A stretch of DNA of 64,000 nt from Ranitomeya imitator. Lineage: Eukaryota. Within the stretch, counting starts at the first letter, position 1. Each line of letters begins with the position of its first letter. The notes beneath the pieces are model-generated. The model saw only the letters and a list, made by a program, of their open reading frames with translations, searched no databases and had not been told where the DNA came from. The stretch lies in assembly GCF_032444005.1 (NCBI RefSeq), contig NC_091288.1, positions 201,872,001-201,936,000 of the forward strand, written 5' to 3'. Shown here piece after piece: positions 2,090 through 47,267 of the stretch. Both the position numbers and the translations under genes were made by a program.

Positions 2090-2161
2090 GTGTGGGTGGC
2101 TCTTATAGTGAGGGTGTAGGTGGCTCTTATAGGGAGGGTGTGGGTGGCTCTTAGAAGAGCC
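2090..2161 (-). repeat. 24-bp tandem repeat of the H2B stem 3' arm plus spacer (3 arms here and at 22264-22335; 4 arms at 43169-43264 and 63880-63975)
   Basis: ggctc at 2098, 2122, 2146. Confidence 0.92.
2146..2161 (-). terminator. H2B histone stem-loop GGCTCT-TCTA-AGAGCC (also 22320, 43249, 63960)
   Basis: AAA before and ACCCA after the 6-bp stem on the minus strand. Confidence 0.95.
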
Positions 2162-2191
2162 TTTGGGGTGAGGAGCGGAGCACGGANNNNN

Positions 2192-3058: not shown

Positions 3059-3229
3059 AGTCTGGGGATGTACTAGATTTTCTCGGCACCACCATCCGCA
3101 TGTGGGGTGCTGCTGTAATCCCGTTCATTATCCTCATTTTTCCTCTGCACATTCCCACATCCAGCCAAGTGATCGCGGGGTCCAGTATACTCATCAGCAT
3201 TGCCAATACTTCGATATGTAGCAAAGAAG

Positions 3230-3800
3230 GAGTGGTGTAAAAATTTGGGGGGCATTTTGAGGGCAACCCAAACGTTGTGCCCCACCAAAAAATGTCCCGG
3301 TTGACCCAAAACATTCTGAAAAAAATTACCACACACTCTTATAGTGTTCCTCTACACACCCTGAGAATTTGTGGTCGACAGACCCAAACCGGGCTTAGCA
3401 GTGACCTTGCGCACCACAGACTTCAATGGGCAGGGTCACTTTGGGGAGTCTCTGCTCAGCCCAGTTTGTGGCTATCATCAACCCCAAATGTTCAGGGTGT
3501 GTAGCTCTAGTGGACCAGTGCTGTAAAAATTTAGGGGGCATTTTGAGATGACCCAAAACATATGCCCCTCCCCACCCCCAAACTTCTGAACAAATTACCC
3601 GACACTCTTGAATTGTTCCTCTACACACCCTGAACATTTGGGGTCGATGGGCACAAACTAGGCTGAGCAGTGACCCTGCGCGCGATAGGCTTCCATGGGC
3701 AGGGCAGCTTTGGGGGGTAACTGCTCAGCACAGATTGGGGCTATCGACTTCAAATTTTCATAGTGTGTAGAGGAATAATTCATGAGTGTGGGCTATTTTT
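3230..3800. mobile_element. Foldback MITE-like modules (about 170 bp, terminal inverted repeats GAATTGTTCCTCTACACAC)
   Basis: 3610-3781 has near-perfect 19-bp terminal IRs; related module at about 3345-3505; central cattgaagtc-type motif. Confidence 0.5.
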
Positions 3801-3828
3801 TTTCTGAATACCTTGCTCTATATACTGT

Positions 3829-4400
3829 ACACACTGCTCTAGATATTGTACACTGCTCTATATACTGTACACACTGCTCTATATATTGTATACTGCTCTA
3901 TATACTGTACACTGATTTACATACTGTACCCTCTCCTGTATATACTGTACACACTGCTACTGTACACTCTGGTCTATATACTGTGTACTCTGCTGTATAT
4001 ACTGTACACACTGCTCTATATACTGTACGCTCTGGTCTATAATACTGTACACTGCTGTATATACTGTTCACACTGCTCTATATACTGTACACTGCTCTAA
4101 ATACTGTACACACTGCTCTATATACTGTATATACTGTATATATACTGTATATATTGCTGTATATATACTGTATATATACTGTATATATTGCTGTATATAC
4201 TGTACAATCTGTTGCACAGTCTGTATACACTGCTGTATATACTGCATACTCTGCTCTATATACTGTACACACGGCACTATGCTATACACTGCTCTATATA
4301 CTGTACACTCTGGTCTATAAACTGGACACTGCTGTATATACTGTACTCTGCTTTATATACTGTACACACTGTTGTATATACTGTAGACTCTCCTCTATTA
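3829..4400 (+). repeat. Degenerate 17-21 bp satellite (CTGCTCTATATACTGTACA); also about 24007-24578 and 44932-45503
   Basis: Dozens of visible tandem copies. Confidence 0.93.
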
Positions 4401-4838
4401 TCTGTGACACTTATTACACTGCTGATCTGGGCTGTGCAGATGTGATGTTGTGCACTATATATACTATATACAGCTGTGTTCTCTGTGTAGACGCTGGATT
4501 TTGTGTCTCCGCTTTTCTCCCAATATTCCCCTTTTGCACAACAGTGGGGGTCACATACATGCATGAATATTTCCGTTTTCTCCCGAGATGTTCATGTGTT
4601 TGGTTGGGGAGTCGCGCTGTGCAGCTGTCGCCTCATCATCAGAGCTCTTCCCTCCATTACAGGCCGCAGCGGTCACAGCTTCACACTGGGTAAGACACGA
4701 TATCAGGCAGGTGATTGCAATCAGCCCCCGATATGGATCATCTACTGATGTGGAACACGTGTCCCCCCAATACTCTGCACATACGGGGTAGAGTGATATC
4801 ACAGGTCAGGGAGGTGGCAGTCAGCGGAGGCCGTCGCC

Positions 4839-5306
4839 TGTGTTACCCTTCTGGGTTCTCAGCAGCTCCAGCTGGTCCCCACATCGTACAATCAGCTTCC
4901 TGTGCGATAGACACTGGAGTAAAGATCCCTGTGATGGTGACAAGAGCCGGGAATAGGAGGAACGAGCTCCCGCAGCAGATTTATCTACCCGGACACACAG
5001 TGATGTGCAGATCGGGAGGACGGCGGCGATAATCTCCGCAATTTCTAGGCGTTTCCACTAGTGACGGCTACAAACGGTCGGTGGAGATGATGGAGAAGGA
5101 GAAGCGACGGAGGAATCGCGCTCTGCTGTCCGGTGTTAGCCGGTAAAGGGTTTTTATCCCGGGCAGGGAAGCACAAGGGGAGAGCGGAGCTTCACTACCT
5201 GCCAGCCCTTATGCCGAAGTGATCAGATTCTATTCTGTGTAATCCGCTCATGTAACCAATATTGGCGGAGGCTGCGGGGAGTTATAGATTTCATGTCTTA
5301 TAAAAG
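4839..5306 (+). promoter_or_regulatory. Orphan H1-type promoter (TG box 4839, AAGCACA 5169, CCAATATTGG 5256, TATAAAAG 5299) with no H1 CDS; also at +20175 and +41100
   Basis: Upstream part is an inverted copy of the H1 upstream region; AC-to-TATA distance is 130 nt in both. Confidence 0.6.
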
Positions 5307-5565
5307 CAGCTCAGCGGGTTATCGATTGTGCAGAGGTGTCAGTATGTGCATGTATATATGTGTATGTACATACCCCATACACCCTTGTATCATTTACCAA
5401 ATAGTACCGTAACAATGAACAGCATCAGCGGTTCCAGCTCCATAATGCAAACAGGGGGCAGCACAATAAGATGGGGGCAAACACCAGTATATGTCAGGAC
5501 TCGGGAGACTTAATGTTAGTCAGATAGGAGCTCTGCACTTCCGCAGCCATTTAATCTCATTCAAT

Positions 5566-6380
5566 GAGCCACCACCTCCTCCCCGCAGAGCTGTATGATC
5601 AGTGCCACCACCTTCTCCCAACAGAGCTGTATGATCAGTGCCACCACCTCCTCCTCGCAGAGCTGTATGATCAGTGCCACCACCTCCTCCCCGCAGAGCT
5701 GTATGATCAGAGCAACCACCTTCTCCCCACAGAGCTGTATGATCAGTGCCATCACCCACTCCCCGCAGAGCTGTATGATCAGTGCCACCACCTCCTCGCA
5801 GAGCTGTATGATCAGTGCCACCACCTCCTCCCCACGGAACTGTATGATCAGTGCCACCGCCTCCTCCCCGCAGAGCTGTATGATCAGTGCCACCACCTCC
5901 TCCTCGCAGAGCTGTATGATCAGTGCCACCACCTCCTCCCCGCAGAGCTGTATGATCAGAGCAACCACCTTCTCCCCACAGAGCTGTATGATCAGTGCCA
6001 TCACCCACTCCCCGCAGAGCTGTATGATCAGTGCCACCACCTCCTCGCAGAGCTGTATGATCAGTGCCACCACCTCCTCCCCACGGAACTGTATGATCAG
6101 TGCCACCGCCTCCTCCCCGCAGAGCTGTATGATCAGTGCCACCACCTCCTCCTCCCTGCAGAGCTGTATGATCAGTGCCACCACCTCCTCCTCCCTGCAG
6201 AGCTGTATGATCAGTGCCACCACCTCCTCCTCCCCGCAGAGCTGTATGATCAGTGCCACTACCTCCTCCCCGCAGAGCTGTATGATCAGAGCAACCACTT
6301 CCTCCCCAGCAGAGCTATATGATCAGTGCCACCACCTTCTCCCCACAGAGCTGTATGATCAGTGCCACCACCTTCTCCCC
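5566..6380 (+). repeat. 36-bp HDE minisatellite, plus orientation, about 22 units
   Basis: GCCACCACCTCCTCCCCGCAGAGCTGTATGATCAGT; 33- and 39-bp variants. Confidence 0.97.
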
Positions 6381-7941
6381 TTCATTGTCTGTTCTAGTTA
6401 TATGGAGATAATGGTCCTTGTATGCAATGTCCAGTAATGATTCCCGAGAGCAGCAGACGCTCCCTGAGGACCCATCTATGCCCAGCAGAGGACACTCATA
6501 GCCAGAGACCGGTACCGGGAGTTCCCTCTCCTCACGCTGCAGAACAGCAGAGCGGGCTGGGGACTAGTGACCGGTGTCACCCGCACTCAGAGCAGCCTGC
6601 AGCTGAAGGAGGAATCCCCCCTAACAAGGAATGTGCCAGTGACACCCTGACAGCGGAGAAAGGACAGGCAGAACACGCAGCAGCCGGGACTCTCCTCGCT
6701 GCGAGCTCCGGTACACAGAGGGGGGCAGGAAGTTCCGGGCTCAGGAGACGGGGACATCACCTGCCATGGGGTGTAAGGGGATGATCTGTAGCGCTGCATC
6801 TAATTATTGGGGGAAGCTCATTATCACTTACCAGACGCATTCAGGTGACATTAATGAGCCGCAGGCAGCGAGGCCGCCGAGTACTGTCCTCAATGGGGAG
6901 CAGCATTATAACAATGAGAATAACTTGCCCCCACTGTGATTTTCTTGTTATACGAATTGACGGTTTACTTTATTTTAATAACACTTGTATTGCAAATGAC
7001 AGAGATCATAAAACTTAGATATAACCTGTTTCTTCATATGAAGATTTACATTCACAGAACATTTATTATCTTCCCGTAGAAGATAATGACAACAGCTTAG
7101 ATGGATAAAACCATAAGCAATGGAGAAAGAACACAGAGAAAGAATTCCAAAACCTGTCATTCCTCAGTTGCTGGAGCTGTAGAATGATGGGCTGCACAGA
7201 TTTTAGAGGATCATCTCTTCATTGTAATAGCTGAATCATTGGAATAGTGATATCCAGCAGGAGACATATGTCAGGACTAATAGTAACAATGCAACAATGA
7301 GGCAGACTGAGGTGTGCACTGACTTGCAGAGAAGCAGCAGTAGTCTGAAGAAGCTGACAATTAAGAACAGCTGTGTACAACCATCTCCTATCTGTAAGCC
7401 GCTAGGAAATTAATTGTTAAACACTTATCTGCTTTTGGAGGCAAAAAAAGACGCTAAATGCTCCTGAGTAACCTCATATCTTGTATTTTACTAACATGTT
7501 TTTCTTTTCCCTTATTTAGGCTATTCAATTTTAGTTACCATATTACATTTCTCCTGTAACTCTGACCTGCTTGGACTGTTGTCTTTTCCTACACTTTTAT
7601 CATATTTGATCCTTTTTCTTACCCTATTAAAATTTATATTTACCGTCCCTCTTTTATTTATGTCTGATATAAAACTGTTTGTGTGTATTGATTATACTTT
7701 AAAAAACAAAAAAAACTACAAATCGCTCTGAGTTCAGTGGCTTTTTATTCCAGCTCTTGCTCCATGGATCGTCCGATACTTTGTGGTCTCGTATTAATTG
7801 AAGTTTATGATTCTCACTTTGTTTCTCCAAAGAAAACATTTATTTATTAAATGACTCCACGGTGATTTGGAAGGTGATTACAGGAGATTGCTGTTGGTGG
7901 ACTTTATATCACATCACAAGAAGCTGCGGAAACTACAACAA

Positions 7942-8166
7942 GCGGGAAATTCAAAATTCCTACCCGCCCTGTGTGCAGCCAATCTGCAGAGGAAGGGGAG
8001 GGGCTAACGTTAACCGTTTAGGAACGTGGAGTTCCCGCTGAGTGGCTGATGAATTTTCCGTTTTTTGTCTTTCTGTAGTTTCAGGACGATCAGATGTCCG
8101 AAAAGTGTTTGTGTGGAGCGATCAATGGTCACTTGTGTCCCATACAGGAGTTTATATATTTCCAGG
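7942..8166 (+). promoter_or_regulatory. Orphan H4-type E2F/CCAAT module B (inverted paralog of module A)
   Basis: gcgggaaattcaaa...agccaatctgcagaggaagggg; downstream body shared with module A. Confidence 0.55.
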
Positions 8167-8675
8167 ATCAAGGGAGAAGTATCCGCTTTCTATAATAGAA
8201 GGTGCAGAACTTTGCGACTATAGTGACTCCATCAGACCAGCAATATTCAGTGCAGGGAATATACAGAAACGAGGTCATGCAGATTAGAAACAATCTTAAA
8301 ATTGGGGTGGGGAGTCTAAAATGCTGATTAATGTTATCTAGGGAAACCTACTATAGAACTGTAAACTCCTGCAGTGAGAAGAATAACAGGAAATATCGCA
8401 GAGTAGATGGGCGCCCTGTATGGTCACATATGAGCATTCTTGCCGCATCCAGTCCCATCACACATCAATATCTTTGCGGATTATTCTAGTATTGGTCCTG
8501 ATCAGGGCGCACAGGGAAGGGGGGATGAGATTATTACATTTCCGCATATATGTATTTACTCCCCCACACACTGCAGACTGAGCCGCGAGTGACCCAGAGA
8601 CCAGATGTTACCGAGCACAAGTGATCCCTCCGGGCATAATTATATGTGAGGAATGAGCTCGTCTTGAGGGAGGAT

Positions 8676-8755
8676 TTGGTGGCTCTGAAAAGAGCCTTTG
8701 TGTTGTGGTCGGTGCCGGGGCAGATCTAAGCTCTCTCCCCACGGATCCGGCGGGC
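8676..8755 (-). pseudogene. H3 3' remnant: last 9 codons (ARRIRGERA*), 3' UTR and stem-loop; also 28851-28930 and 49563-49642
   Basis: Matches H3 3' end at about 10570-10648, then switches abruptly at 8756 to H4 downstream flank sequence. Confidence 0.92.
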
Positions 8756-9031: not shown

Positions 9032-9545
<514 letters not shown>

Positions 9546-10245: not shown

Positions 10246-10573
10246 CAATAGTGACCGCGTTCCTGCAGATCCACCCCATTTACGTCTGCACTGTATAGGA
10301 ACCGCACATCCACCACCGCAAACCCGGTTGTGCACTGTACACACTTTACGCGGTCCTTATAACACGTCGGTTTTGTTATAGATGTCGGACACTTTTGGAC
10401 TGGGCGAGAATAGAGAATGTGCAGAGCGATAACCAATATCGCTGATCACCTGCAATATCGGAAGCAGCAGCCTCCGTCCATTAACTGATCGACCGTGCCT
10501 GCGCTTCGTACACGGAGAATACGCGCAGAAAAGGGACTGCTCAGGAATCGGCTCATTTGGGAGAGACTTTGGT

Positions 10574-10589
10574 GGCTCTGAAAAGAGCC
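10574..10589 (-). terminator. H3 stem-loop (also 30750, 51462)
   Basis: Canonical GGCTCTTTTCAGAGCC ACCA. Confidence 0.96.
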
Positions 10590-10618
10590 TTTGTGTTGTG
10601 GTCGCAGCCGGGGCAGAT

Positions 10619-11230
<612 letters not shown>

Positions 11231-11437
11231 CTGAAGTCCCCGCCTCTTCCGTGATGCGTCTGTCCTCAGATCACTCATTTGCCGCTTGCTGGAGCAGCTG
11301 ATGTATTTGCGTTCAAATGTCCCCGTGTATAGCGCTGTACAGTGCAGCTCCCGCAATATCGACAGATCACACAAACCCCCCATCCTGAGACTGCGCCCAG
11401 CATCAGTTATATTACAAACATTAGAAGTCCGAGAACT

Positions 11438-12366
11438 AATCATACAGCTCTGCGGGGAGGAGGCGGTGGCACTGATCATACAGCTCTGTGGGGAGGAGGT
11501 GGTGGCTCTGATCATACAGCTCTGCGGGGAGGAGGTGGTGGCTCTGATCATACAGCTCTGTGGGGAGAAGGTGGTGGCACTGATCAAACAGCTCTGCTGG
11601 GGAGGAGGTGGCTCTGATCATACAGCTCTGTGGGGAGAGGTGGTGGCACTGATCATACAGCTCTGCTGGGGAGGAGGTGGTTGCTCTGATCATACAGCTC
11701 TGCGGGGAGGAGGTAGTGGCACTGATCATACAGCTCTGCGGGGAGGAGGTAGTGGCTCTGATCATACAGCTCTGCGGGGAGAATGTGATGGCTCTGATCA
11801 TACAGCTCTGCTGGGGAGGAGGTGGTGGCTCTGATCATACAGCTCTGTGGGGAGAAGGTGGTTGCTCTGATCATACAGCTCTGCGGGGAGGAGGTAGTGG
11901 CACTGATAATACAGCTCTGCGGGGAGGAGGTAGTGGCACTGATCATACAGCTCTGTGGGGAGAAGGTGGTTGCTCTGATCATACAGCTCTGCGAGGAGGA
12001 GGTGATGGCACTGATCATACAGCTCTGCGGGGAGGAGGTGGTGGCACTGATCATACAGCTCTGTGGGGAGAAGGTGGTTGCTCTGATCATACAGCTCTGC
12101 GGGGAGGAGGTGGTGGCACTGATCATACAGCTCTGCGAGGAGGAGGTGGTGGCACTGATCATACAGCTCTGCGGGGAGTGGGTGATGGCACTGATCATAC
12201 AGCTCTGCGGGGAGGAGGTGGTGGCACTGATCATACAGCTCTGCGGGGAGGAGGTGGTGGCACTGCTCATACAGCTCTGCGGGGAGTGGGTGATGGCACT
12301 GATCATACAGCTCTGCTGGGAGGAGGTGTTGGCACTGATCATACAGCTCTGCGGGGAGGAGGTGGT
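11438..12366 (-). repeat. 36-bp HDE minisatellite directly 3' of the H1 stem-loop, about 26 units
   Basis: First unit is the H1 spacer plus HDE itself. Confidence 0.97.
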
Positions 12367-12382
12367 GGCTCTTATAAGAGCC
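12367..12382 (-). terminator. H1 stem-loop GGCTCT-TATA-AGAGCC (also 33155, 53867), followed by HDE CAGAGCTGTA
   Basis: Stem canonical, loop UAUA; AGAGCTGTA is complementary to the vertebrate U7 5' end UACAGCUCU. Confidence 0.93.
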
Positions 12383-12410
12383 TTTGTGGTATCAGAACAG
12401 GGGCTGCAGC

Positions 12411-13049
12411 TTATTTCTTAGCCGCGGGCTTCTTGGCTTTCGCAGCCTTCTTAGCCGGACTCTTGGCGGGTTTGGCCGCCTTCTTAGCCGGACTCTTCGT
12501 CACCTTCTTGGGCTTGGGAGCGGCTTTCGGCTTTTTGGGGCTCTTGGCCGCTTTCTTGGCAGCTGCGGGCTTCTTGGCCTTTTTCGGGCTCTTCTTGGCC
12601 GCGGTCGGAGCCTTCTTGGGCTTCTTCGGAGATTTGGCGGCTTTCTTGGCAGCAGCGGGTTTCTTAGATTTGGCCGCAGCTGCTGGCTTCTTCTTGGCCA
12701 CTTTGTCCTTCGTCTCCTGCTTCTTGTTCAGCTTGAAGGACCCGGAGGCGCCGCTGCCCTTCACCTGGAGGAGGGCGCCCTTGGTGACCAGAGACTTGAC
12801 GGCCAGCTTCAGGCGGCTGTTGTTCTTCTCTACATCGTATCCTCCGGCAGACAGAGCCTTCTTCAGGGCGGCCAGAGACACCCCGCTGCGCTCCTTGGAG
12901 GCGGACACGGCTTTCACGATCAGCTCGGAGACGCTGGGGCCGGAGGGTTTATTGCTCTTCTTGGCAGCAGATTTCTTCGGCTGCTTCTTGGATTTGGCGG
13001 CCGGTTCTGCGGGAGGGGGAGCGGCGGCTGGCGCGGTCTCTGCCATCAT
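12411..13049 (-). CDS. H1: Linker histone H1 (212 aa from first of two adjacent ATGs), canonical Lys-rich tail
   Basis: Globular domain [13 protein letters not shown]...[14 protein letters not shown] and K/A/P-rich tail ending AKKPAAKK. Confidence 0.97.
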
Positions 13050-13121
13050 GTGCTGCGGAAAAACAAGATGAAAATATTTCCTGATAGGAAGGAAAACACT
13101 GAGGCCGGAGCTGGAGGCGCC

Positions 13122-13601
13122 TGTTATATGTACAGGCTTACTGCGCACTGATTGGCTGCTGAGCTGCACCGTTCTGAGCTTCTATTGGCTGACACTGGAC
13201 ATAAACCCCGCCTCCTCCCAGCTGAGTCCGGGTGAAGCACCGCTCTCTCCTTGTGCTTCCCTGCCCGGGATAAAAGCCCTTTACCGGCTAACACCGGACA
13301 GCAGAGCGCGCTTCCTCCATCGCCTCTCCTTCTCCAACATCTCCACCGGCCATTTGTAGCCGTCACTAGCAGAGATGCCGGGAAAGAGCGGAGAACAAAT
13401 CCCGGGATCATCGCCGCCGTCCTCCCGATCTGCACCTCACTGTGTATCCGGGGAGATAAATCTGCTGCGGGAGCTCGTTCCTCCTATTCCCGGCTCTTGT
13501 CACCATCACAGGGATCTTTACTCCAATGTCTATCGTACAGGGAGCTGATTGTACGATGTGGGGACGAGCTGGAGCTGCTGAGAACCCAGAAGGGTAACAC
13601 A
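13122..13601 (-). promoter_or_regulatory. H1 promoter: TATAAC (13128), two CCAAT, AC-box-like AAGCACA (13258-13252), TG box TGTGTTA (13601-13595)
   Basis: Order matches vertebrate H1 promoter architecture; TG-to-AC distance 343 nt. Confidence 0.7.
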
Positions 13602-14019
13602 GGCGACGGCCTCCGCTGACTGCCCCCTCCCTGACCTGTGGTGTCACTGTACCCCGTATGTGCAGAGGATTGGGGGGACACGTGTTCCACACCAGTAGAT
13701 GATCCACATCGGTGGCTGAGTGCAATCACCTGCCTGATATCTTGTCTTAGTGGTGGGAAAGAGCTCTGATGAGGCGACAGCTGCACAGTGCGACTCCCCA
13801 ACCAAACACATGGACATCTCAGGGGAGAAAACTGAAATATTAACGGATGTATATGACCCCCACTATTATGCAAAAGGGGAATATTGGGAGAAGAGCGGAG
13901 ACACAAAATCCAGCGTCTACACAGAGAACACAGCTGTATATAGTATATATAGTGCACAGCATCACATCTGCACAGCCCAGATCAGCAGTGTAATAAGTGC
14001 CACTGATAATAGAGGAGAG

Positions 14020-14690
14020 GGTACAGTATATACAGCAGAGTGTACAGTATATAGAGCAGTGTATAGTATATACAGCAGTGTACAGTATATAGAGCAGTGT
14101 ATAGTATAGTGCGGTGTGTACAGTATATAGAGCGGTGTGTGCAGTATATACAGCAGAGTACACTGTATGTAGACCAGAGTGTACAGTATATACAGCAGAG
14201 TACACAGTATATAGACCAGAGTGTACAGTATACAGAGCAGTGTGTGCAGTATATGCAGCAGAGTACACAGTATATAGAGCAGTGTACAGTATATACAGCA
14301 GTGTACAGTATTTACAGCAATGTACAGTAAATAGACCAGAGTGTACAGTATATAGAGCAGTGTACAGTAGTGCGGTGTGTGCAGTATATAGAGCAGAGTA
14401 TACAGTATATACAGCAGAGTACAGTATATAGAGCAGAGTGCACAGTATAAAGAGCTGTGTGTACAGTATATACAGGAGAGGGTACAGTACATAGAGCAGT
14501 GTGTACAGTATATAGAGCACTGTACACAGTATATACAGCAGTGTGTACAGTATGTAGAGGAGAGTGTAGAGTATGTACAGCAGTGTGTACAGTATATAGA
14601 TCATTGTGTGCATTATATAGAGCAAAGCGTTCAGTATATAGAGCAGTGTGCAGTATAGTGCGGTGTATATAGAGCAGTGTATACAGTATA
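14020..14690 (-). repeat. Same satellite, inverted; also about 34806-35587 and 55518-56299 (longer)
   Basis: Reads tatatagagcagtgtacag on the plus strand. Confidence 0.93.
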
Positions 14691-14741
14691 CTATTATTAT
14701 TTTTTTATATAGCACCATTGATTCCATGGTGCTGTACATGA
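14691..14741 (-). mobile_element. L2-like LINE 3' terminal stem-loop and (AAT)n tail; also about 35587 and 56299
   Basis: Minus strand TGTAC-AGCACCAT-GGAATCA-ATGGTGCT-ATATAAAAAAATAATAATA: 8-bp stem with GGA-led loop then microsatellite tail. Confidence 0.6.
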
Positions 14742-14744
14742 GCG

Positions 14745-15650
14745 GTGACCTCCCAAAGTGTAGAGGAACAATTCAAGAGTGTGGGGTACTTATTTCAGAA
14801 TTCGGGGGGGGGGGGGGTTAACGGCCCGGGGGGGGGCATTTTTTTGAGGGGCATTACTTGTGGGCAAGGTCAATTTGGGGGGTCACAGCTCAACCCGGTT
14901 TTGGGCTATCAACCCCAAATTTTCAGGGTGTGTAGAGTACCCCTAGCGAACCAATAGTGTAAAAAATTGAGGGTGGCACTTTGAGGGCACCCCAAAACTA
15001 ATGCCCCCCCACCCCCAAAAAAAAAAAAAAAAAAAATGCCCCCCTCCCATTAACCTAAAAATTCTGAAAAAAAAAATAGCCCAACTAATGAATTGTTCCT
15101 CTACACACTATGAAAATTTGACGTCGATAGCCCCAATCTGGGCTGAGCAGTTACCCCCCAAAGCTGCCCTGCCCATTGAAGCCTATCGCGCGCAGGGTCA
15201 CTGCCCAGCCTGGTTTGTGCCTACCGACCCCACATTTTCAGGGTGTGTAGAGGAACAATTCAAGAGTGTCGGGTAATTTGTTCAGAAGTTTGGGGGTCGG
15301 GAAGGGGGGCATATTTTTGGGGTGATCTCAAAATGCCCCCCACATTTTTGCAGCACTGGTCCACTAGAGCTATGGGTACGCTACACACCCTGAAAATGTG
15401 TGGTTGATAGCCACAAACAGGGCTGAGCAGAGACTCCCCAAAGTGACCCTGCCCATTGAAGTCTATGGTGCGCAAGGTCACTGCTCAGCCCGATTTGGGT
15501 CTGTCGACCACAAATTCTCAGGGTGTGTAGAGGAACACTTTAAGAGTGTGTGGTAATTTTTTTCAGAATGTTTTGGGTCAACCGGGGCATTTTTTGGTGG
15601 GGCACAACGTTTGGGTTGCCCTCAAAAGCCCCCCAAAGTTTTACACCACA
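14745..15650. mobile_element. Foldback MITE-like modules, inverted and expanded counterpart of 3230-3800
   Basis: 15090-15261 is bounded by a perfect 19-bp IR; further partial modules at about 14757 and 15380-15545. Confidence 0.5.
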
Positions 15651-15991
15651 CCTCCTTTGCTACATATCGAAGTATTGGCAATGCTGATGAGTATACTGGA
15701 CCCCGCGATCACTTGGCTGGATGTGGGAATGTGCAGAGGAAAAATGAGGATAATGAACGGGATTACAGCAGCACCCCACATGCGGATGGTGGTGCCGAGA
15801 AAATCTAGTACATCAGCCTCATTCTGGAGAGGTGCTGACATGAAGGATTGATCAGCTCTCCGTGAGAGAGAGCGAGAAAGAAAGAGAGAGAGAAAGCCTG
15901 ATGTGACGCTACCGGGTCTCGGGTGGGGGAAGTCGCCGGTTCTGTAAAGCGAGTGTGTAGTGGGGGTCAGCACACACACGGCGACTAAGGA

Positions 15992-16741: not shown

Positions 16742-16841
16742 AGCTTAGGACAACATCTTAACAGATTTAGAAAACGCCGGGAGTTGCTCCGTTATTAGAG
16801 CTGTAGAGGGATCTGCTTGGGAAAACCAGGTTAGTCTTTCT
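16742..16841 (+). pseudogene. Possible heavily decayed 5S rRNA-like relic; also about 37641 and 58353
   Basis: By-eye colinear match about 44/79 to vertebrate 5S, incl. TGGGAAAACCAGGT vs TGGGAATACCAGGT, then TAGTCTTT vs TAGGCTTT. Confidence 0.3.
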
Positions 16842-17046
16842 AGGTCAAAATATTGGAAAAGACCCTAGTCCCAGATCACACACTGCGGGCACATCCCAGA
16901 ATCTGGATAATGCGGTTTCATTCCTTCGACCGGGAACCCACAGCATTAGTGGCTCAGTAAAGGTTCTAAACGATATATTAACTTTATAACCACCAGGAAC
17001 CAGAGCGCAGGAATAGGAAGGTGCAGCCTCTCACTGAGATGTGGGT

Positions 17047-17062
17047 GGCTCTGAAAAGAGCC
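17047..17062 (-). terminator. H4b stem-loop (also 37946, 58658)
   Basis: Canonical. Confidence 0.96.
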
Positions 17063-17092
17063 TTTGGGTTGTGAAGACAGAAGAGAACACAA

Positions 17093-17413
<321 letters not shown>

Positions 17414-17453
17414 TCAGTGAGCAAAAACTGATTCCTGGACAGCACGGACTGCT

Positions 17454-17600
17454 CCTTTATATGGAGGAAGAATGGACCAGAGAGAGAACTGCAGAGATGA
17501 CGCACTTCCGGGACGGGTCTTCCAGAATCTACATTTGCCCCTCCCTTCCTCTGCTGATTGGCTGACCACAGAACTGTTGGGACGTTTGAGTTTCCCGCTC
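17454..17600 (-). promoter_or_regulatory. H4b promoter: TATA, GGTCC, CCAAT, TTTGAGTTTCCCGC
   Basis: Same modules as H4a promoter but diverged sequence. Confidence 0.8.
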
Positions 17601-17719
17601 ATTGGTCATATTCTGCAATTATCTTCCCAGCTTGTATTTTATGCAATTTCTTTCCCTTGTGACTAAAGATATCCCACATATTTTCATCACCGTTCCAGAT
17701 CATCGTGGTTCATACCATC

Positions 17720-20117: not shown

Positions 20118-20534
<417 letters not shown>

Positions 20535-22365
20535 CTAAAGACAGAAAATCGTGTGGAGAAGAGACTGTGCTGTGTGGCCTTATATAGTCTGCTGCTCCGC
20601 CCTCCTCTCCTGTCATTGGATGACTCTGAAGCTGGCCAATGGGGAAGAGTCTTGAGGAACCGCCAATGAGCTGCCGAGGGCGGAGCTTATTATTGCTCCT
20701 TGCTCAAATTAGTTTCTCACCCAATAGAAAACGTTCGCTTTGGACCGAATAGATAAGGGGTGAAAACAGATATTTGTCTTGGAGCAGAAGGAAGTGCAGA
20801 AATATTCTGTTGATTTGTAGTTTGCACTTGTTGAATTTGTGTCTACTATCAGCCATAAATTGCACTGACAGTCTGGTGGGTGAGGGGTTAATCCCTGTCA
20901 GTGCTTCTCCTCCGCTCCATCTGCACAGGAGGCGGCTCCTCACTCACCCGCTTATTACCCTGTGCAGATTCCCTGTGGTGTCCGCGCTGATCCTATCACA
21001 GCCTGACTGAGACAAGTCTCCTATGTTCTGCCCGGAGCCTGATGTGACGCTGCCGGGTCCCGGGTGGGGGAAGTCGCCGCTTCTGTATTGTATGATACAA
21101 TATTGTTCTGCTCCAGGAAGACATCCAGGCCTCTCTTGAACCCCTCGACTGAGTTCGCCATCACCACCTCCTCAGGCAAGCAATTCCAGATTCTCACCGC
21201 CCTAACAGTAAAGAATCCTCTTCTATGTTGGTGGAAAAACCTTCTCTCCTCCAGACGCAAAGAATGCCCCCTTGTGCCCGTGGCCTTGGTATAAACCTTG
21301 GTATAAACAGATCCTCAGCGAGATATTTCTATTGTCCCCTTATATACTTATACATGGTTATTAGATCGCCCCTCAGTCGTCTTTTTCTAGACTAAATAAT
21401 CCTAATTTCGCTAATCTATCTGGGTATTGTAGTTCTCAATAGAATTGTAGTTCTCAATACCCAGATAGTGGTAATGTTCTGAGCAGGGACACTCCGCAAT
21501 CTTCTACACATGATCGTACATTTCCCATCACAGAGGGATCTGCTGGGAAGGGCAGAATTGGTCTTCCCTGAAATGTCTCTTGTAGGATACGTCCCTGACC
21601 AGTATATCGTCTGCACAGTACTGATTGTGACGGGAAAGGGACGATCTGATCGTCTCCAGGTCAGGCACACGGGCACATCACAGCATGTGGAGAACACGAA
21701 TCAGTCTCTATATCTATGAGTGGAAACAGGAGCGAATACTGCACCGCTAACCTGGAAATCTGCAGACTCCTGTGTGGGATGTAAGAGAGCAATGATCGCT
21801 CAACACAAGCAGATTTCCCGATATCGGTCCTGGGAGCACGTGTCATATGAAGACAAAGGACGGAAAAAAGCGGGAACTTTAAACTTTTTACCATTGGAAA
21901 CATTAGCTCCTCCCTCTGCTGATTGGCTGAACACAGGACGGTTAGGGGGGTTTGAATTTCCCGCCGCTTCTAAATGTAATGACGTCATTTACACTGTAAA
22001 AAGAATTCAATTAGGCTCTAGATCAACTCCACCGACCACCACAAATGGCTCCTGTTAACGGAGAAAGGAGAGTAATGAACGAGACCCCAGAATGCCGAGA
22101 TCTGTGCAGCAAGGGGTTAAATAAGTCCCTGAATACACATCAACTCACTGAGCAATGCCCAGATTATTCCTGAGGTTTTCTCACCATCTCCCTCGTCATC
22201 AGACGCAGAGCCCCGGGCGGTGCGAGCAGACACCTCGGGGAGACGGGAGAGGACACCGGAGCAGTGTGGGTGGCTCTTATAGTGAGGGTGTAGGTGGCTC
22301 TTATAGGGAGGGTGTGGGTGGCTCTTAGAAGAGCCTTTGGGGTGAGGAGCGGAGCACGGANNNNN

Positions 22366-22842: not shown

Positions 22843-25740
22843 TCAGACCGCCGTGCTATTGGGTGATGATTGAAGTCATGTGACCAACGGGAACGTCAGA
22901 CGCTCCGCCCACTGCAGCTGATTGGTGGTTCTCCAACTGATATTTCGCTTTTCAGCACCCTCCATATAGCGCTGTAAAACACGTATAATGCTGAATACAT
23001 CTAAATAGTGCTGTGAAGCGCCATATACCGCAGTGCACCCTCATATAGTGCTCTATGTGTTAATGTAGCTCTGTTTACCCTTCATGTGCTGCAGTATACT
23101 CCAATATAGTGCTGCTATTCATCTGTATAGTGCAGAGTGCCCCCATATACTGCAACTTACTGACAAATGACTGTGCCACTTCCAGAGCTCGGCCGTCATG
23201 GCCCTGCAGGAGGCCAGCGAGGCTTATCTGCTGGGGAGTCTGGGGATGTACTAGATTTTCTCGGCACCACCATCCGCATGTGGGGTGCTGCTGTAATCCC
23301 GTTCATTATCCTCATTTTTCCTCTGCACATTCCCACATCCAGCCAAGTGATCGCGGGGTCCAGTATACTCATCAGCATTGCCAATACTTCGATATGTAGC
23401 AAAGAAGGAGTGGTGTAAAAATTTGGGGGGCATTTTGAGGGCAACCCAAACGTTGTGCCCCACCAAAAAATGTCCCGGTTGACCCAAAACATTCTGAAAA
23501 AAATTACCACACACTCTTATAGTGTTCCTCTACACACCCTGAGAATTTGTGGTCGACAGACCCAAACCGGGCTTAGCAGTGACCTTGCGCACCACAGACT
23601 TCAATGGGCAGGGTCACTTTGGGGAGTCTCTGCTCAGCCCAGTTTGTGGCTATCATCAACCCCAAATGTTCAGGGTGTGTAGCTCTAGTGGACCAGTGCT
23701 GTAAAAATTTAGGGGGCATTTTGAGATGACCCAAAACATATGCCCCTCCCCACCCCCAAACTTCTGAACAAATTACCCGACACTCTTGAATTGTTCCTCT
23801 ACACACCCTGAACATTTGGGGTCGATGGGCACAAACTAGGCTGAGCAGTGACCCTGCGCGCGATAGACTTCCATGGGCAGGGCAGCTTTGGGGGGTAACT
23901 GCTCAGCACAGATTGGGGCTATCGACTTCAAATTTTCATAGTGTGTAGAGGAATAATTCATGAGTGTGGGCTATTTTTTTTCTGAATACCTTGCTCTATA
24001 TACTGTACACACTGCTCTAGATATTGTACACTGCTCTATATACTGTACACACTGCTCTATATATTGTATACTGCTCTATATACTGTACACTGATTTACAT
24101 ACTGTACCCTCTCCTGTATATACTGTACACACTGCTACTGTACACTCTGGTCTATATACTGTGTACTCTGCTGTATATACTGTACACACTGCTCTATATA
24201 CTGTACGCTCTGGTCTATAATACTGTACACTGCTGTATATACTGTTCACACTGCTCTATATACTGTACACTGCTCTAAATACTGTACACACTGCTCTATA
24301 TACTGTATATACTGTATATATACTGTATATATTGCTGTATATATACTGTATATATACTGTATATATTGCTGTATATACTGTACAATCTGTTGCACAGTCT
24401 GTATACACTGCTGTATATACTGCATACTCTGCTCTATATACTGTACACACGGCACTATGCTATACACTGCTCTATATACTGTACACTCTGGTCTATAAAC
24501 TGGACACTGCTGTATATACTGTACTCTGCTTTATATACTGTACACACTGTTGTATATACTGTAGACTCTCCTCTATTATCTGTGACACTTATTACACTGC
24601 TGATCTGGGCTGTGCAGATGTGATGTTGTGCACTATATATACTATATACAGCTGTGTTCTCTGTGTAGACGCTGGATTTTGTGTCTCCGCTTTTCTCCCA
24701 ATATTCCCCTTTTGCACAACAGTGGGGGTCACATACATGCATGAATATTTCCGTTTTCTCCCGAGATGTTCATGTGTTTGGTTGGGGAGTCGCGCTGTGC
24801 AGCTGTCGCCTCATCAGAGCTCTTCCCTCCATTACAGGCCGCAGCGGTCACAGCTTCACACTGGGTAAGACACGATATCAGGCAGGTGATTGCAATCAGC
24901 CCCCGATATGGATCATCTACTGATGTGGAACACGTGTCCCCCCAATACTCTGCACATACGGGGTAGAGTGATATCACAGGTCAGGGAGGTGGCAGTCAGC
25001 GGAGGCCGTCGCCTGTGTTACCCTTCTGGGTTCTCAGCAGCTCCAGCTGGTCCCCACATCGTACAATCAGCTTCCTGTGCGATAGACACTGGAGTAAAGA
25101 TCCCTGTGATGGTGACAAGAGCCGGGAATAGGAGGAACGAGCTCCCGCAGCAGATTTATCTACCCGGACACACAGTGATGTGCAGATCGGGAGGACGGCG
25201 GCGATAATCTCCGCAATTTCTAGGCGTTTCCACTAGTGACGGCTACAAACGGTCGGTGGAGATGATGGAGAAGGAGAAGCGACGGAGGAATCGCGCTCTG
25301 CTGTCCGGTGTTAGCCGGTAAAGGGTTTTTATCCCGGGCAGGGAAGCACAAGGGGAGAGCGGAGCTTCACTACCTGCCAGCCCTTATGCCGAAGTGATCA
25401 GATTCTATTCTGTGTAATCCGCTCATGTAACCAATATTGGCGGAGGCTGCGGGGAGTTATAGATTTCATGTCTTATAAAAGCAGCTCAGCGGGTTATCGA
25501 TTGTGCAGAGGTGTCAGTATGTGCATGTATATATGTGTATGTACATACCCCATACACCCTTGTATCATTTACCAAATAGTACCGTAACAATGAACAGCAT
25601 CAGCGGTTCCAGCTCCATAATGCAAACAGGGGGCAGCACAATAAGATGGGGGCAAACACCAGTATATGTCAGGACTCGGGAGACTTAATGTTAGTCAGAT
25701 AGGAGCTCTGCACTTCCGCAGCCATTTAATCTCATTCAAT

Positions 25741-26555
25741 GAGCCACCACCTCCTCCCCGCAGAGCTGTATGATCAGTGCCACCACCTTCTCCCAACAGA
25801 GCTGTATGATCAGTGCCACCACCTCCTCCTCGCAGAGCTGTATGATCAGTGCCACCACCTCCTCCCCGCAGAGCTGTATGATCAGAGCAACCACCTTCTC
25901 CCCACAGAGCTGTATGATCAGTGCCATCACCCACTCCCCGCAGAGCTGTATGATCAGTGCCACCACCTCCTCGCAGAGCTGTATGATCAGTGCCACCACC
26001 TCCTCCCCACGGAACTGTATGATCAGTGCCACCGCCTCCTCCCCGCAGAGCTGTATGATCAGTGCCACCACCTCCTCCTCGCAGAGCTGTATGATCAGTG
26101 CCACCACCTCCTCCCCGCAGAGCTGTATGATCAGAGCAACCACCTTCTCCCCACAGAGCTGTATGATCAGTGCCATCACCCACTCCCCGCAGAGCTGTAT
26201 GATCAGTGCCACCACCTCCTCGCAGAGCTGTATGATCAGTGCCACCACCTCCTCCCCACGGAACTGTATGATCAGTGCCACCGCCTCCTCCCCGCAGAGC
26301 TGTATGATCAGTGCCACCACCTCCTCCTCCCTGCAGAGCTGTATGATCAGTGCCACCACCTCCTCCTCCCTGCAGAGCTGTATGATCAGTGCCACCACCT
26401 CCTCCTCCCCGCAGAGCTGTATGATCAGTGCCACTACCTCCTCCCCGCAGAGCTGTATGATCAGAGCAACCACTTCCTCCCCAGCAGAGCTATATGATCA
26501 GTGCCACCACCTTCTCCCCACAGAGCTGTATGATCAGTGCCACCACCTTCTCCCC
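25741..26555 (+). repeat. 36-bp HDE minisatellite, about 22 units
   Basis: As 5566-6380. Confidence 0.97.
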
Positions 26556-33154: not shown

Positions 33155-33179
33155 GGCTCTTATAAGAGCCTTTGTGGTA

Positions 33180-43771: not shown

Positions 43772-46665
43772 TCAGACCGCCGTGCTATTGGGTGATGATG
43801 TCATGTGACCAACGGGAACGTCAGACGCTCCGCCCACTGCAGCTGATTGGTGGTTCTCCAACTGATATTTCGCTTTTCAGCACCCTCCATATAGCGCTGT
43901 AAAACACGTATAATGCTGAATACATCTAAATAGTGCTGTGAAGCGCCATATACCGCAGTGCACCCTCATATAGTGCTCTATGTGTTAATGTAGCTCTGTT
44001 TACCCTTCATGTGCTGCAGTATACTCCAATATAGTGCTGCTATTCATCTGTATAGTGCAGAGTGCCCCCATATACTGCAACTTACTGACAAATGACTGTG
44101 CCACTTCCAGAGCTCGGCCGTCATGGCCCTGCAGGAGGCCAGCGAGGCTTATCTGCTGGGGAGTCTGGGGATGTACTAGATTTTCTCGGCACCACCATCC
44201 GCATGTGGGGTGCTGCTGTAATCCCGTTCATTATCCTCATTTTTCCTCTGCACATTCCCACATCCAGCCAAGTGATCGCGGGGTCCAGTATACTCATCAG
44301 CATTGCCAATACTTCGATATGTAGCAAAGAAGGAGTGGTGTAAAAATTTGGGGGGCATTTTGAGGGCAACCCAAACGTTGTGCCCCACCAAAAAATGTCC
44401 CGGTTGACCCAAAACATTCTGAAAAAAATTACCACACACTCTTATAGTGTTCCTCTACACACCCTGAGAATTTGTGGTCGACAGACCCAAACCGGGCTTA
44501 GCAGTGACCTTGCGCAACACAGACTTCAATGGGCAGGGTCACTTTGGGGAGTCTCTGCTCAGCCCAGTTTGTGGCTATCATCAACCCCAAATGTTCAGGG
44601 TGTGTAGCTCTAGTGGACCAGTGCTGTAAAAATTTAGGGGGCATTTTGAGATGACCCAAAACATATGCCCCTCCCCACCCCCAAACTTCTGAACAAATTA
44701 CCCGACACTCTTGAATTGTTCCTCTACACACCCTGAACATTTGGGGTCGATGGGCACAAACTAGGCTGAGCAGTGACCCTGCGCGCGATAGGCTTCCATG
44801 GGCAGGGCAGCTTTGGGGGGTAACTGCTCAGCACAGATTGGGGCTATCGACTTCAAATTTTCATAGTGTGTAGAGGAATAATTCATGAGTGTGGGCTATT
44901 TTTTTTCTGAATACCTTGCTCTATATACTGTACACACTGCTCTAGATATTGTACACTGCTCTATATACTGTACACACTGCTCTATATATTGTATACTGCT
45001 CTATATACTGTACACTGATTTACATACTGTACCCTCTCCTGTATATACTGTACACACTGCTACTGTACACTCTGGTCTATATACTGTGTACTCTGCTGTA
45101 TATACTGTACACACTGCTCTATATACTGTACGCTCTGGTCTATAATACTGTACACTGCTGTATATACTGTTCACACTGCTCTATATACTGTACACTGCTC
45201 TAAATACTGTACACACTGCTCTATATACTGTATATACTGTATATATACTGTATATATTGCTGTATATATACTGTATATATACTGTATATATTGCTGTATA
45301 TACTGTACAATCTGTTGCACAGTCTGTATACACTGCTGTATATACTGCATACTCTGCTCTATATACTGTACACACGGCACTATGCTATACACTGCTCTAT
45401 ATACTGTACACTCTGGTCTATAAACTGGACACTGCTGTATATACTGTACTCTGCTTTATATACTGTACACACTGTTGTATATACTGTAGACTCTCCTCTA
45501 TTATCTGTGACACTTATTACACTGCTGATCTGGGCTGTGCAGATGTGATGTTGTGCACTATATATACTATATACAGCTGTGTTCTCTGTGTAGACGCTGG
45601 ATTTTGTGTCTCCGCTTTTCTCCCAATATTCCCCTTTTGCACAACAGTGGGGGTCACATACATGCATGAATATTTCAGTTTTCTCCCGAGATGTTCATGT
45701 GTTTGGTTGGGGAGTCGCGCTGTGCAGCTGTCGCCTCATCAGAGCTCTTCCCTCCATTACAGGCCGCAGCGGTCACAGCTTCACACTGGGTAAGACACGA
45801 TATCAGGCAGGTGATTGCAATCAGCCCCCGATATGGATCATCTACTGATGTGGAACACGTGTCCCCCCAATACTCTGCACATACGGGGTAGAGTGATATC
45901 ACAGGTCAGGGAGGTGGCAGTCAGCGGAGGCCGTCGCCTGTGTTACCCTTCTGGGTTCTCAGCAGCTCCAGCTGGTCCCCACATCGTACAATCAGCTTCC
46001 TGTGCGATAGACACTGGAGTAAAGATCCCTGTGATGGTGACAAGAGCCGGGAATAGGAGGAACGAGCTCCCGCAGCAGATTTATCTACCCGGACACACAG
46101 TGATGTGCAGATCGGGAGGACGGCGGCGATAATCTCCGCAATTTCTAGGCGTTTCCACTAGTGACGGCTACAAACGGTCGGTGGAGATGATGGAGAAGGA
46201 GAAGCGACGGAGGAATCGCGCTCTGCTGTCCGGTGTTAGCCGGTAAAGGGTTTTTATCCCGGGCAGGGAAGCACAAGGGGAGAGCGGAGCTTCACTACCT
46301 GCCAGCCCTTATGCCGAAGTGATCAGATTCTATTCTGTGTAATCCGCTCATGTAACCAATATTGGCGGAGGCTGCGGGGAGTTATAGATTTCATGTCTTA
46401 TAAAAGCAGCTCAGCGGGTTATCGATTGTGCAGAGGTGTCAGTATGTGCATGTATATATGTGTATGTACATACCCCATACACCCTTGTATCATTTACCAA
46501 ATAGTACCGTAACAATGAACAGCATCAGCGGTTCCAGCTCCATAATGCAAACAGGGGGCAGCACAATAAGATGGGGGCAAACACCAGTATATGTCAGGAC
46601 TCGGGAGACTTAATGTTAGTCAGATAGGAGCTCTGCACTTCCGCAGCCATTTAATCTCATTCAAT

Positions 46666-47267
46666 GAGCCACCACCTCCTCCCCGCAGAGCTGTATGATC
46701 AGTGCCACCACCTTCTCCCAACAGAGCTGTATGATCAGTGCCACCACCTCCTCCTCGCAGAGCTGTATGATCAGTGCCACCACCTCCTCCCCGCAGAGCT
46801 GTATGATCAGAGCAACCACCTTCTCCCCACAGAGCTGTATGATCAGTGCCATCACCCACTCCCCGCAGAGCTGTATGATCAGTGCCACCACCTCCTCGCA
46901 GAGCTGTATGATCAGTGCCACCACCTCCTCCCCACGGAACTGTATGATCAGTGCCACCGCCTCCTCCCCGCAGAGCTGTATGATCAGTGCCACCACCTCC
47001 TCCCCGCAGAGCTGTATGATCAGTGCCACCACCTCCTCCTCCCTGCAGAGCTGTATGATCAGTGCCACCACCTCCTCCTCCCCGCAGAGCTGTATGATCA
47101 GTGCCACCACCTCCTCCTCCCCGCAGAGCTGTATGATCAGTGCCACTACCTCCTCCCCGCAGAGCTGTATGATCAGAGCAACCACTTCCTCCCCAGCAGA
47201 GCTATATGATCAGTGCCACCACCTTCTCCCCACAGAGCTGTATGATCAGTGCCACCACCTTCTCCCC
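46666..47267 (+). repeat. 36-bp HDE minisatellite, about 16-17 units
   Basis: Shorter allele. Confidence 0.97.

What the first reader, a model, noticed from the sequence alone, without database searches (positions are those of the whole stretch)
4839..6380. 'Ghost H1' locus: H1-type promoter and H1-type 3' HDE array with the coding sequence replaced by about 250 nt of non-coding DNA
Seen on plus strand: TG box TGTGTTA (4839), AC-box-like AAGCACA (5169), palindromic CCAATATTGG (5256), consensus TATAAAAG (5299), about 250 nt unrelated to H1, a degenerate hairpin CTCAT-TCA-ATGAG running into GAGCCACCACC (5556-5576), then 16-22 HDE repeats. AC-to-TATA distance is 130 nt, identical to the real H1 gene (13258 to 13128), although the intervening sequence is not alignable. 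TG and AC boxes are H1-specific promoter elements (established). Inference: an S-phase non-coding RNA lacking an SLBP stem-loop but carrying many U7-pairing sites, a candidate U7 snRNP decoy or histone-locus-body scaffold, present once per repeat.
Basis: partly seen in the sequence, partly recalled or inferred. Interest (0 to 1): 0.85.

Follow-up and report, generated by a model that had tools for sequence, protein, structure and literature searches.

The report
Gene-less shell of a histone H1 gene
In each unit of this poison-frog histone repeat there is a second, inverted copy of the H1 gene's surroundings whose gene body has been swapped for 370 bases of unrelated DNA; it looks like a dead remnant, and no RNA from it was found.

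Summary
Every motif is at the stated coordinate. The locus has H1-type DNA on both sides and no H1 gene between them. It occurs once in each of the three repeat units.

- 3067-5195 (+) matches the H1 upstream region 15814-13232 (-) at 84-93% identity. The TG and AC boxes lie inside this stretch.
- The 36-bp array 5566-6380 matches the array behind H1 (12371-11435).
- The TG and AC boxes are therefore inherited copies, not independent promoter evidence.

Between two sharp breakpoints, 860 bp of H1 are replaced by 370 bp with no detectable homology to H1. The lost part holds the GC box, both CCAAT boxes, the TATA, the coding sequence and the stem-loop.

The new segment carries a CCAAT-TATAAAAG pair that is unlikely by chance. 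No SLBP-type stem-loop is present, even at Rfam E<=10.

No indexed RNA run holds the 370-bp segment, while at least 14 hold H1 mRNA. Two RNA assemblies that contain H1 mRNA show no contig on the ghost promoter or body.

A second relic, an H3 3' end without a gene, lies in the same unit.

Best reading: a remnant of a duplicated H1 gene (about 0.68). The proposed U7-decoy RNA is unsupported but not excluded (about 0.06). The scan had already described the H1 array elsewhere in this genome; the gene-less copy had not been noted.

The parts
3067..5195 (+). Left arm of the inverted duplication: a paralogous copy of the H1 upstream region. It includes the 21-bp satellite at 3814-4411.
   Evidence: blastn against 15814-13232 (-): 93.5% over 3067-3803, 83.8% over 3817-4659, 90.9% over 4691-5195. 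MAFFT gives 93.1% and 95.9%.
4839..4845 (+). TG box TGTGTTA, inherited with the arm. Its counterpart is at 13601 (-).
5169..5175 (+). AC-box-like AAGCACA, inherited with the arm. Its counterpart is at 13258 (-).
5196..5565 (+). 370-bp replacement segment with no detectable homology to H1 or to anything else in the window. It sits where H1 has 860 bp (13231-12372).
   Evidence: It is 100% identical at 25371-25740 and 46296-46665.
5256..5306 (+). Promoter-like module: palindromic CCAATATTGG, then TATAAAAG 43 nt downstream.
   Evidence: CCAAT-N15-45-TATAAA occurs only here and at the H2B promoter in each unit. 0.84 matches per 64 kb are expected by chance. TATAAAAG occurs only here.
5342..5373 (+). 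TG/TA-rich low-complexity hairpin just after the predicted start site.
   Evidence: fold. The mir-297 match scores 26.7 bits against a gathering score of 90, so it is not a member.
5556..5568 (+). 5-bp hairpin with a 3-nt loop at the right breakpoint. It is not an SLBP-type stem-loop.
   Evidence: No Rfam Histone3 match in 5300-6450 even at E<=10. Alignment to the H1 stem-loop region is not above chance.
5566..6380 (+). 36-bp array. Each unit is the 3' stem arm remnant + cleavage region + HDE. There are 22.5 units, and 19 keep AGAGCTGTA.
   Evidence: Homologous to 12371-11435 (-).
11435..12371 (-). Counterpart array behind the real H1 gene (26 units in unit 1).
12341..13231 (-). The part of the real H1 gene that the ghost lacks: GC box, two CCAAT boxes, TATA, coding sequence 13046-12411 and stem-loop 12387-12341.
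13232..15814 (-). Right arm of the inverted duplication (the upstream region of the real H1).
25371..26555 (+). Ghost body and array in unit 2.
46296..47267 (+). Ghost body and array in unit 3 (16.5 units).

Best explanation
The locus is the remnant of a second H1 gene that entered the repeat unit in inverted orientation, as part of a segmental duplication of at least 3.3 kb. The duplicated piece held the upstream region, its 21-bp satellite, the gene, and a 3' array that was already amplified.

Later, one non-homologous event removed the proximal promoter, the coding sequence and most of the stem-loop. It left 370 bp of foreign DNA in their place. The origin of that DNA is unknown. The breakpoints are at 5195/5196 and at 5565/5566, the latter within the loop or 3' arm of the stem-loop.

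The shell was then copied along with the rest of the 20-kb unit as the tandem repeat was amplified and homogenised. It needs no function to persist. Its array is a neutral minisatellite that keeps expanding and contracting.

Shown here: the duplication, the sharp breakpoints, the lack of a stem-loop, and the lack of detectable RNA.

Inferred: the order of events, and the absence of function.
For: 1. Both flanks match H1 in the same order and orientation, with sharp breakpoints and no residual homology between them.
2. The two arrays share the first unit, six further unit types and the run of types '3-0-1'. The array therefore existed before the copy was made, or the arrays have exchanged sequence since.
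3. A contig in an independent run (X1) joins a ghost-lineage upstream arm to an H1-type GC-box promoter that differs from the window's H1. It carries the ghost state at 5 of 6 diagnostic sites. Intact H1 genes of the ghost's lineage therefore exist in this species.
4. The same unit holds another gene-less relic: an H3 3' end with a canonical stem-loop at 8656-8755, fused to a duplicated H4 block.
5. No indexed RNA run holds the 370-nt segment, against at least 14 for H1 mRNA. Runs X5 and X8 hold H1 mRNA but have no contig on 4440-5565.
6. The presumed transcribed part (5336-5565) has a CpG observed/expected ratio of 0.37, begins with TG/TA low-complexity DNA, folds no better than shuffles (z 0.55) and matches no RNA family.
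7. Variants with a broken HDE core (GGAACTGT, AGAGCTAT) occur only in the ghost array. 19 of 22 ghost units are intact, against 25 of 26 behind H1.
8. Histone clusters are known to shed pseudogenes by birth-and-death evolution (PMC13525598).
Against: - The CCAAT-TATAAAAG module in the foreign segment is unlikely by chance. The post-hoc expectation is about 0.002 for this 370 bp on this strand, derived. It points into the array.
- The AC-box-to-TATA distance equals that of the real gene, at 130 nt.
- The ghost's upstream arm has kept its CpGs as well as the real promoter has: 30 against 29, with no decay asymmetry. It is therefore not obviously silenced and methylated in the germ line.
- The RNA evidence rests on assembled contigs of probably poly(A)-selected tissue libraries. 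Such libraries would miss an unstable, non-polyadenylated or oocyte/embryo-specific RNA.
- Conservation in other species could not be tested.
Confidence: 0.68

Rival explanations
1. The CCAAT/TATA module is an active promoter, and the locus makes a transcript that runs into the array. The RNA would be a by-product with no role: it has no stem-loop and no poly(A) signal, so it would be cut or degraded quickly.
For: - The promoter-like module is rare in the window. Apart from the ghost, it occurs only at the H2B promoter.
- The TATA is a perfect consensus.
- The upstream H1 enhancer-type boxes are retained, and CpGs in the arm are retained.
- No AATAAA lies on the + strand between 5300 and 9000. 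Each unit offers a 9-bp U7 duplex.
Against: No RNA contig lies on 4440-5565 in two RNA assemblies that contain H1 mRNA, and no RNA run in the index holds the segment.
Confidence: 0.18
2. One reading: an S-phase non-coding RNA carrying about 22 U7-pairing sites and no SLBP site. It would act as a decoy for U7 snRNP, as a scaffold for the histone locus body, or as a target of U7-dependent repression.
For: - 19 of 22 units keep AGAGCTGTA. This forms a perfect 9-bp duplex of -14 kcal/mol with the 5' end of mammalian U7, used as a proxy. Shuffles average -6.6 with sd 2.1. It is the best HDE in the cluster.
- There is one copy per unit.
- Human LTR12 lincRNAs combine several HDE-like motifs with NF-Y/CCAAT sites and are regulated by U7 (PMC11417402).
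Against: - No RNA was detected.
- The much longer arrays behind the real H1 genes, which RNA does enter, would already supply far more such sites. A separate decoy gene would add little.
- Mutants of the HDE core accumulate in the ghost array only.
- In human cells, overexpressing the HDE-bearing lincRNAs changed neither U7 level nor histone processing.
- In mammalian extracts, substrates without a stem-loop needed a duplex of about 15 bp to be cut (PMC7026596). Here the duplex is 9 bp.
Confidence: 0.06
3. The meaningful feature is the DNA, not an RNA. Two inverted arms of more than 3 kb, ending in inverted arrays, flank H4a-H3. They would promote inversion or gene conversion within the unit.
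For: Inverted arms at 84-93% identity lie 5 kb apart. The arrays share unit types, which is compatible with exchange between them.
Against: No inversion variant was seen among the three units. The arms have diverged by 4-9% while the units differ by about 0.2%, so ongoing exchange between arms is not evident outside the arrays.
Confidence: 0.05
4. An assembly artefact created the junctions.
For: The region is repetitive, and the left junction is spanned in independent data by only a 20-nt stretch.
Against: The structure is identical in three units. An independent contig in X1 spans the right junction (5438-5578). A fragment in X2 covers 5206-5319 and carries the reverse complement of 5181-5200, which crosses the left junction.
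Confidence: 0.02

Closest known systems
Histone pseudogenes and relics produced by birth-and-death evolution of histone clusters
   Same: A duplicated histone gene that lost its function while its neighbours stayed active. The same unit holds a second relic, an H3 3' end.
   Different: Usual pseudogenes keep a decayed coding sequence. Here the coding sequence is completely gone and both regulatory flanks survive, including a 22-unit array of the 3' processing signal.
The 36-bp minisatellite behind the H1 genes of this genome
   Same: Same unit, same unit types, same first unit. Each unit is the 3' stem arm remnant, the cleavage region and the HDE.
   Different: This copy has no H1 gene and no stem-loop in front of it, lies in inverted orientation, and has its own higher-order repeat of 249 bp and private variants.
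Human LTR12 elements and lincRNAs with several HDE-like motifs that pair with U7 snRNA (PMC11417402)
   Same: Non-histone DNA with multiple U7-complementary motifs next to a CCAAT box.
   Different: The human motifs are 15 nt long and sit in expressed, U7-repressed transcripts. Here the pairing is 9 nt, no transcript was found, and a sponge role was rejected even in the human case.
Vertebrate replication-dependent H1 promoter (AC/H1 box, GC box, H1-type CCAAT, TATA; TG box upstream)
   Same: TG box and AC-like box at the same relative places as in the real gene, and the same AC-to-TATA distance of 130 nt.
   Different: The GC box and the CCAATCA-type box are lost. The CCAAT and TATA present belong to unrelated DNA with different spacing (43 nt against 27 nt). 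The definition of these boxes rests on my own knowledge; the paper library returned nothing on them.

Membership tests
Replication-dependent histone H1 gene | Open reading frame for a linker histone (H15 globular domain) | tested here: not met
   No similarity of 5196-5565 to the H1 gene on either strand. The only long ORFs run through the repeat.
Replication-dependent histone H1 gene | 3' stem-loop that binds SLBP | tested here: not met
   Rfam Histone3 finds all real genes, with H1 at 29.9 bits. It finds nothing in 5300-6450 at E<=10.
Replication-dependent histone H1 gene | Purine-rich downstream element complementary to the U7 5' end | tested here: met
   19 of 22 units hold AGAGCTGTA, giving a 9-bp duplex of -14 kcal/mol with mammalian U7 as a proxy. 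The frog's own U7 was not available.
Replication-dependent histone H1 gene | H1-type promoter: AC box, GC box, H1-type CCAAT, TATA | tested here: inconclusive
   The AC-like and TG boxes are present by descent, and a TATA is present. The GC box and the CCAATCA box are absent.
Histone gene relic / pseudogene | Paralogous to a functional histone gene locus over its flanks, in the same order and orientation | tested here: met
   3067-5195 matches 15814-13232, and 5566-6380 matches 12371-11435.
Histone gene relic / pseudogene | No product | tested here: inconclusive
   No coding sequence. No RNA appears in indexed runs or in two RNA assemblies. Contigs cannot show absence.
U7-binding non-coding RNA (decoy or U7 target, as for LTR12 lincRNAs) | The locus is transcribed | tested here: inconclusive
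   Not detected. No total-RNA, oocyte or nascent-RNA data could be examined.
U7-binding non-coding RNA (decoy or U7 target, as for LTR12 lincRNAs) | The RNA binds U7 snRNP in cells | not testable with these tools
   Needs U7/Lsm11 immunoprecipitation.
Solo LTR or other transposon fragment (as the origin of the 370 bp) | Terminal TG...CA with inverted ends, target-site duplication, other copies | tested here: not met
   No terminal repeats or duplication and no other copy in the window. Genome-wide copy number could not be tested.

The most novel reading that the evidence does not exclude
The shell is a working gene for a stem-loop-less RNA made of about 22 U7-pairing sites. It would be driven by H1 cell-cycle enhancer boxes plus a new CCAAT/TATA core, once per histone repeat unit. 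It would either titrate or concentrate U7 snRNP at the histone locus, or be a target of U7/NF-Y-type repression like human LTR12 lincRNAs.
Probability: 0.06. Interest if true: 0.8.

Novelty: new member of a known kind. Interest (0 to 1): 0.3.

Why it matters
If it is a relic, as the evidence favours, it is a tidy record of how a tandem histone repeat is built. Segmental duplication, inversion, loss of a gene body and later amplification of the whole unit are all visible. It also shows that the H1 3' array existed before that duplication.

It is a useful natural control for the H1 arrays. The same satellite sits without a gene or a stem-loop in front of it. Comparing RNA, U7 binding and array turnover between the two copies would show whether the arrays behind real H1 genes are used.

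Only if the CCAAT/TATA module proves active would it bear on U7 snRNP biology.

Tried and rejected
- **Residual homology between the 370 bp and H1.** Local and anchored alignments against shuffles gave nothing. The 'degenerate hairpin' is therefore not a decayed stem-loop by this test.
- **Other copies of the 370 bp in the window.** None beyond the three units.
- **RNA families.** None fit. The mir-297 match is a low-complexity hit far below threshold.
- **RNA fold of the predicted transcript.** No better than shuffles.
- **Repeats or target-site duplication around the segment.** None.
- **CpG decay asymmetry between the arms**, as a sign of germ-line silencing. No signal: 4 against 1, in the opposite direction.
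- **Differences among the three units**, as a sign of constraint. Uninformative, since the units differ by only about 0.2%.
- **Related species.** The window's H1 protein is not on record. The H1 loci of Ranitomeya variabilis, R. imitator and Phyllobates terribilis were found, but their DNA could not be fetched. Conservation is therefore untested.
- **Metagenome scan with a 20-mer from the promoter.** One hit, a 22-nt chance match.
- **The extra C-terminal exon of the R. variabilis H1 model.** Not encoded in the window.
- **Paper searches for the TG and AC boxes.** Nothing returned. Those definitions rest on my own knowledge.
- **Earlier findings searched by sequence and by words for a gene-less copy.** None.

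Full report
**Setting**

The window holds three tandem copies of a histone repeat unit of 20.2-20.9 kb. In unit 1 all genes lie on the minus strand:
- H2B 1943-2572 (partly masked)
- H4 9032-9343
- H3 10619-11029
- H1 12411-13046
- a second H4 17093-17404
- H2A 20118-20510

The H1 protein is closest to H1 of Ranitomeya variabilis (96%) and R. imitator (98%). This agrees with earlier notes of this scan that the genome is a poison frog.

**The observation**

The 36-bp array at 5568-6380 has 22.5 units in units 1 and 2 and 16.5 in unit 3. The AC-box-to-TATA distance is 130 nt in the ghost and in the real gene.

**What the locus is**

A self-comparison of the unit shows an inverted duplication.
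- 3067-5195 (+) matches 15814-13232 (-). Identity is 93.5% over 3067-3803, about 84% across the 21-bp satellite, and 90.9% over 4691-5195.
- 5566-6380 (+) matches the array behind H1, 12371-11435 (-).
- Order and orientation are those of the H1 gene: upstream region, then array.
- The TG box (4839, matching 13601) and the AC-like box (5169, matching 13258) lie inside the duplicated arm. They are inherited copies, not independent signs of a promoter.

Between the two blocks, the real gene has 860 bp (13231-12372). These hold the GC box, two CCAAT boxes, the TATA, the 5' UTR, the coding sequence, the 3' UTR and the stem-loop. The ghost has 370 bp (5196-5565).
- These 370 bp show no similarity to H1. 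The local score of 20 compares with a shuffle mean of 19.2.
- Alignments anchored at either breakpoint are not above chance.
- The breakpoints are therefore sharp. The right one lies in the loop or 3' arm of the stem-loop, since homology resumes at (G)AGCCACC.
- The small hairpin at 5556-5568 is not a decayed stem-loop by this test. Rfam's histone stem-loop model finds all real genes and finds nothing in 5300-6450, even at E<=10.

**History**

- The two arrays begin with the same first unit. They share six further exact unit types and the run of types 3-0-1. Each also has private types, and the ghost array has its own 249-bp higher-order repeat. The array was thus already amplified when the copy was made, or the arrays have exchanged sequence since.
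- The arms differ by 4-9%, while the three units differ by only about 0.2% outside the arrays. The duplication and the loss of the gene body therefore predate the latest amplification of the unit.
- A contig from an independent run (X1, most likely DNA) carries the ghost-lineage arm at 5 of 6 diagnostic sites. It continues into an H1-type GC-box promoter that differs from the window's H1. Intact H1 genes of the ghost's lineage therefore exist in this species.
- The same unit holds a second gene-less relic. It is the last 30 nt of H3 plus its 3' UTR and a canonical stem-loop at 8656-8755, 95.6% identical to the real H3 3' end. It is fused to the edge of a duplicated H4 block.
- Histone clusters are known to shed pseudogenes (PMC13525598).

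**Is it a promoter?**

The 370-bp segment holds CCAATATTGG and, 43 nt further on, a consensus TATAAAAG.
- In the whole window, CCAAT-N15-45-TATAAA occurs only here and at the H2B promoter. By chance 0.84 matches per 64 kb are expected.
- My post-hoc estimate for this 370 bp on this strand is about 0.002. The module is therefore probably not a chance occurrence.
- It is not H1-type. The GC box and the CCAATCA box 27 nt before the TATA are gone.
- The ghost's upstream arm has kept its CpGs as well as the real one (30 against 29, no decay asymmetry). The presumed transcribed part, 5336-5565, is CpG-poor, with an observed/expected ratio of 0.37.
- That part begins with TG/TA low-complexity DNA, folds no better than shuffles and matches no RNA family.
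- No AATAAA lies on the + strand between 5300 and 9000.

**Is it transcribed?**

- An index of public runs found only three holders of the 370-nt segment, none labelled RNA. RNA runs of the same species hold none of its words.
- H1 mRNA is held by at least 14 RNA-labelled runs at shares of 0.25-0.78.
- Contigs of four runs were laid on 4440-5640.
  - The two RNA runs (X5, X8), which hold H1 mRNA, have nothing on 4440-5565 and only short contigs on the 36-bp units.
  - One X8 contig is the H1 3' UTR and stem-loop reading 43 nt into the first unit. The array RNA that exists is thus accounted for by H1 read-through.
  - The two holders of unknown kind look like DNA. They cover non-transcribed promoter DNA, and one fragment ends at 5319, before the predicted start.
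- This argues against an abundant stable RNA. It does not exclude an unstable, non-polyadenylated or oocyte/embryo-specific one.

**U7 pairing**

With the 5' end of mammalian U7 as printed in PMC7026596, used as a proxy, the common units form a perfect 9-bp duplex of -14 kcal/mol. Shuffles average -6.6 with sd 2.1. It is the best downstream element in the cluster.
- 19 of 22 ghost units keep the 9-mer, against 25 of 26 behind H1. The variants with a broken core are private to the ghost array.
- In mammalian extracts, substrates without a stem-loop were cut only with a duplex of about 15 bp.

**Comparison with the known**

The closest kind is a histone gene relic. It is unusual in that the coding sequence is entirely gone while both flanks survive.

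The closest functional analogy is the set of human LTR12 lincRNAs with several HDE-like motifs next to NF-Y/CCAAT sites. There U7 represses the RNAs, and a sponge role was tested and rejected (PMC11417402).

**Verdict**

- 'H1-derived locus without a coding sequence' is right.
- 'H1-type promoter' is half right.
- 'U7 decoy or scaffold RNA' has no support here.

Best reading: a dead shell of a duplicated H1 gene, carried along by the repeat (0.68). Next: a cryptic, functionless transcript from the CCAAT/TATA module (0.18).

The array behind H1 was described several times by this scan on other DNA of this genome. The gene-less inverted copy was not.

Noticed in passing
window 8656-8755 (-): H3 3'-end relic: the last ~30 nt of the H3 coding sequence, the 3' UTR and a canonical stem-loop (Rfam 33.7 bits). 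It is 95.6% identical to 10559-10648, has no H3 gene, and is fused to the end of the duplicated H4 block (8754-9548 matches 16815-17604 at 92%).
   Followed up: partly
window 2090-2166 (-), also 22264-22327 and 43169-43270: Behind the H2B stem-loop, a 24-bp unit made of the loop end, the 3' stem arm and the cleavage region (TATAAGAGCCACC...) is repeated 2.7 to 3.7 times. This is the same kind of amplification as behind H1, on a small scale.
   Followed up: no
window 11435-14656 against 32224-35449 and 52936-56161: The H1 gene region of unit 1 is only 93.6% identical to that of units 2 and 3, while the rest of the unit differs by about 0.2%. Two H1 haplotype blocks therefore sit in otherwise homogenised units.
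   Followed up: no
window 12341-12400 (-), run X8: An RNA-run contig holds the H1 3' UTR and stem-loop and continues 43 nt into the first 36-bp unit. This is uncleaved or read-through H1 RNA (or DNA carry-over).
   Followed up: partly
window 5104-5196, run X1: A contig joins a ghost-lineage upstream arm to an H1-type GC-box promoter that differs from the window's H1. A third H1 lineage with an intact promoter therefore exists in this species.
   Followed up: partly
protein P0004 (Ranitomeya imitator): An annotated H1 product reads through the stop codon into the 3' UTR, the stem-loop and the first 36-bp unit (…HHLLPAELYDQC…). R. imitator therefore has the same stem-loop variant and at least one such unit behind H1.
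   Followed up: no
window 7960-8040 (+): GC box, CCAAT and GA-rich stretch with no gene after it, in the otherwise AT-rich spacer between the ghost array and the H3 relic. It may be another orphan promoter.
   Followed up: no
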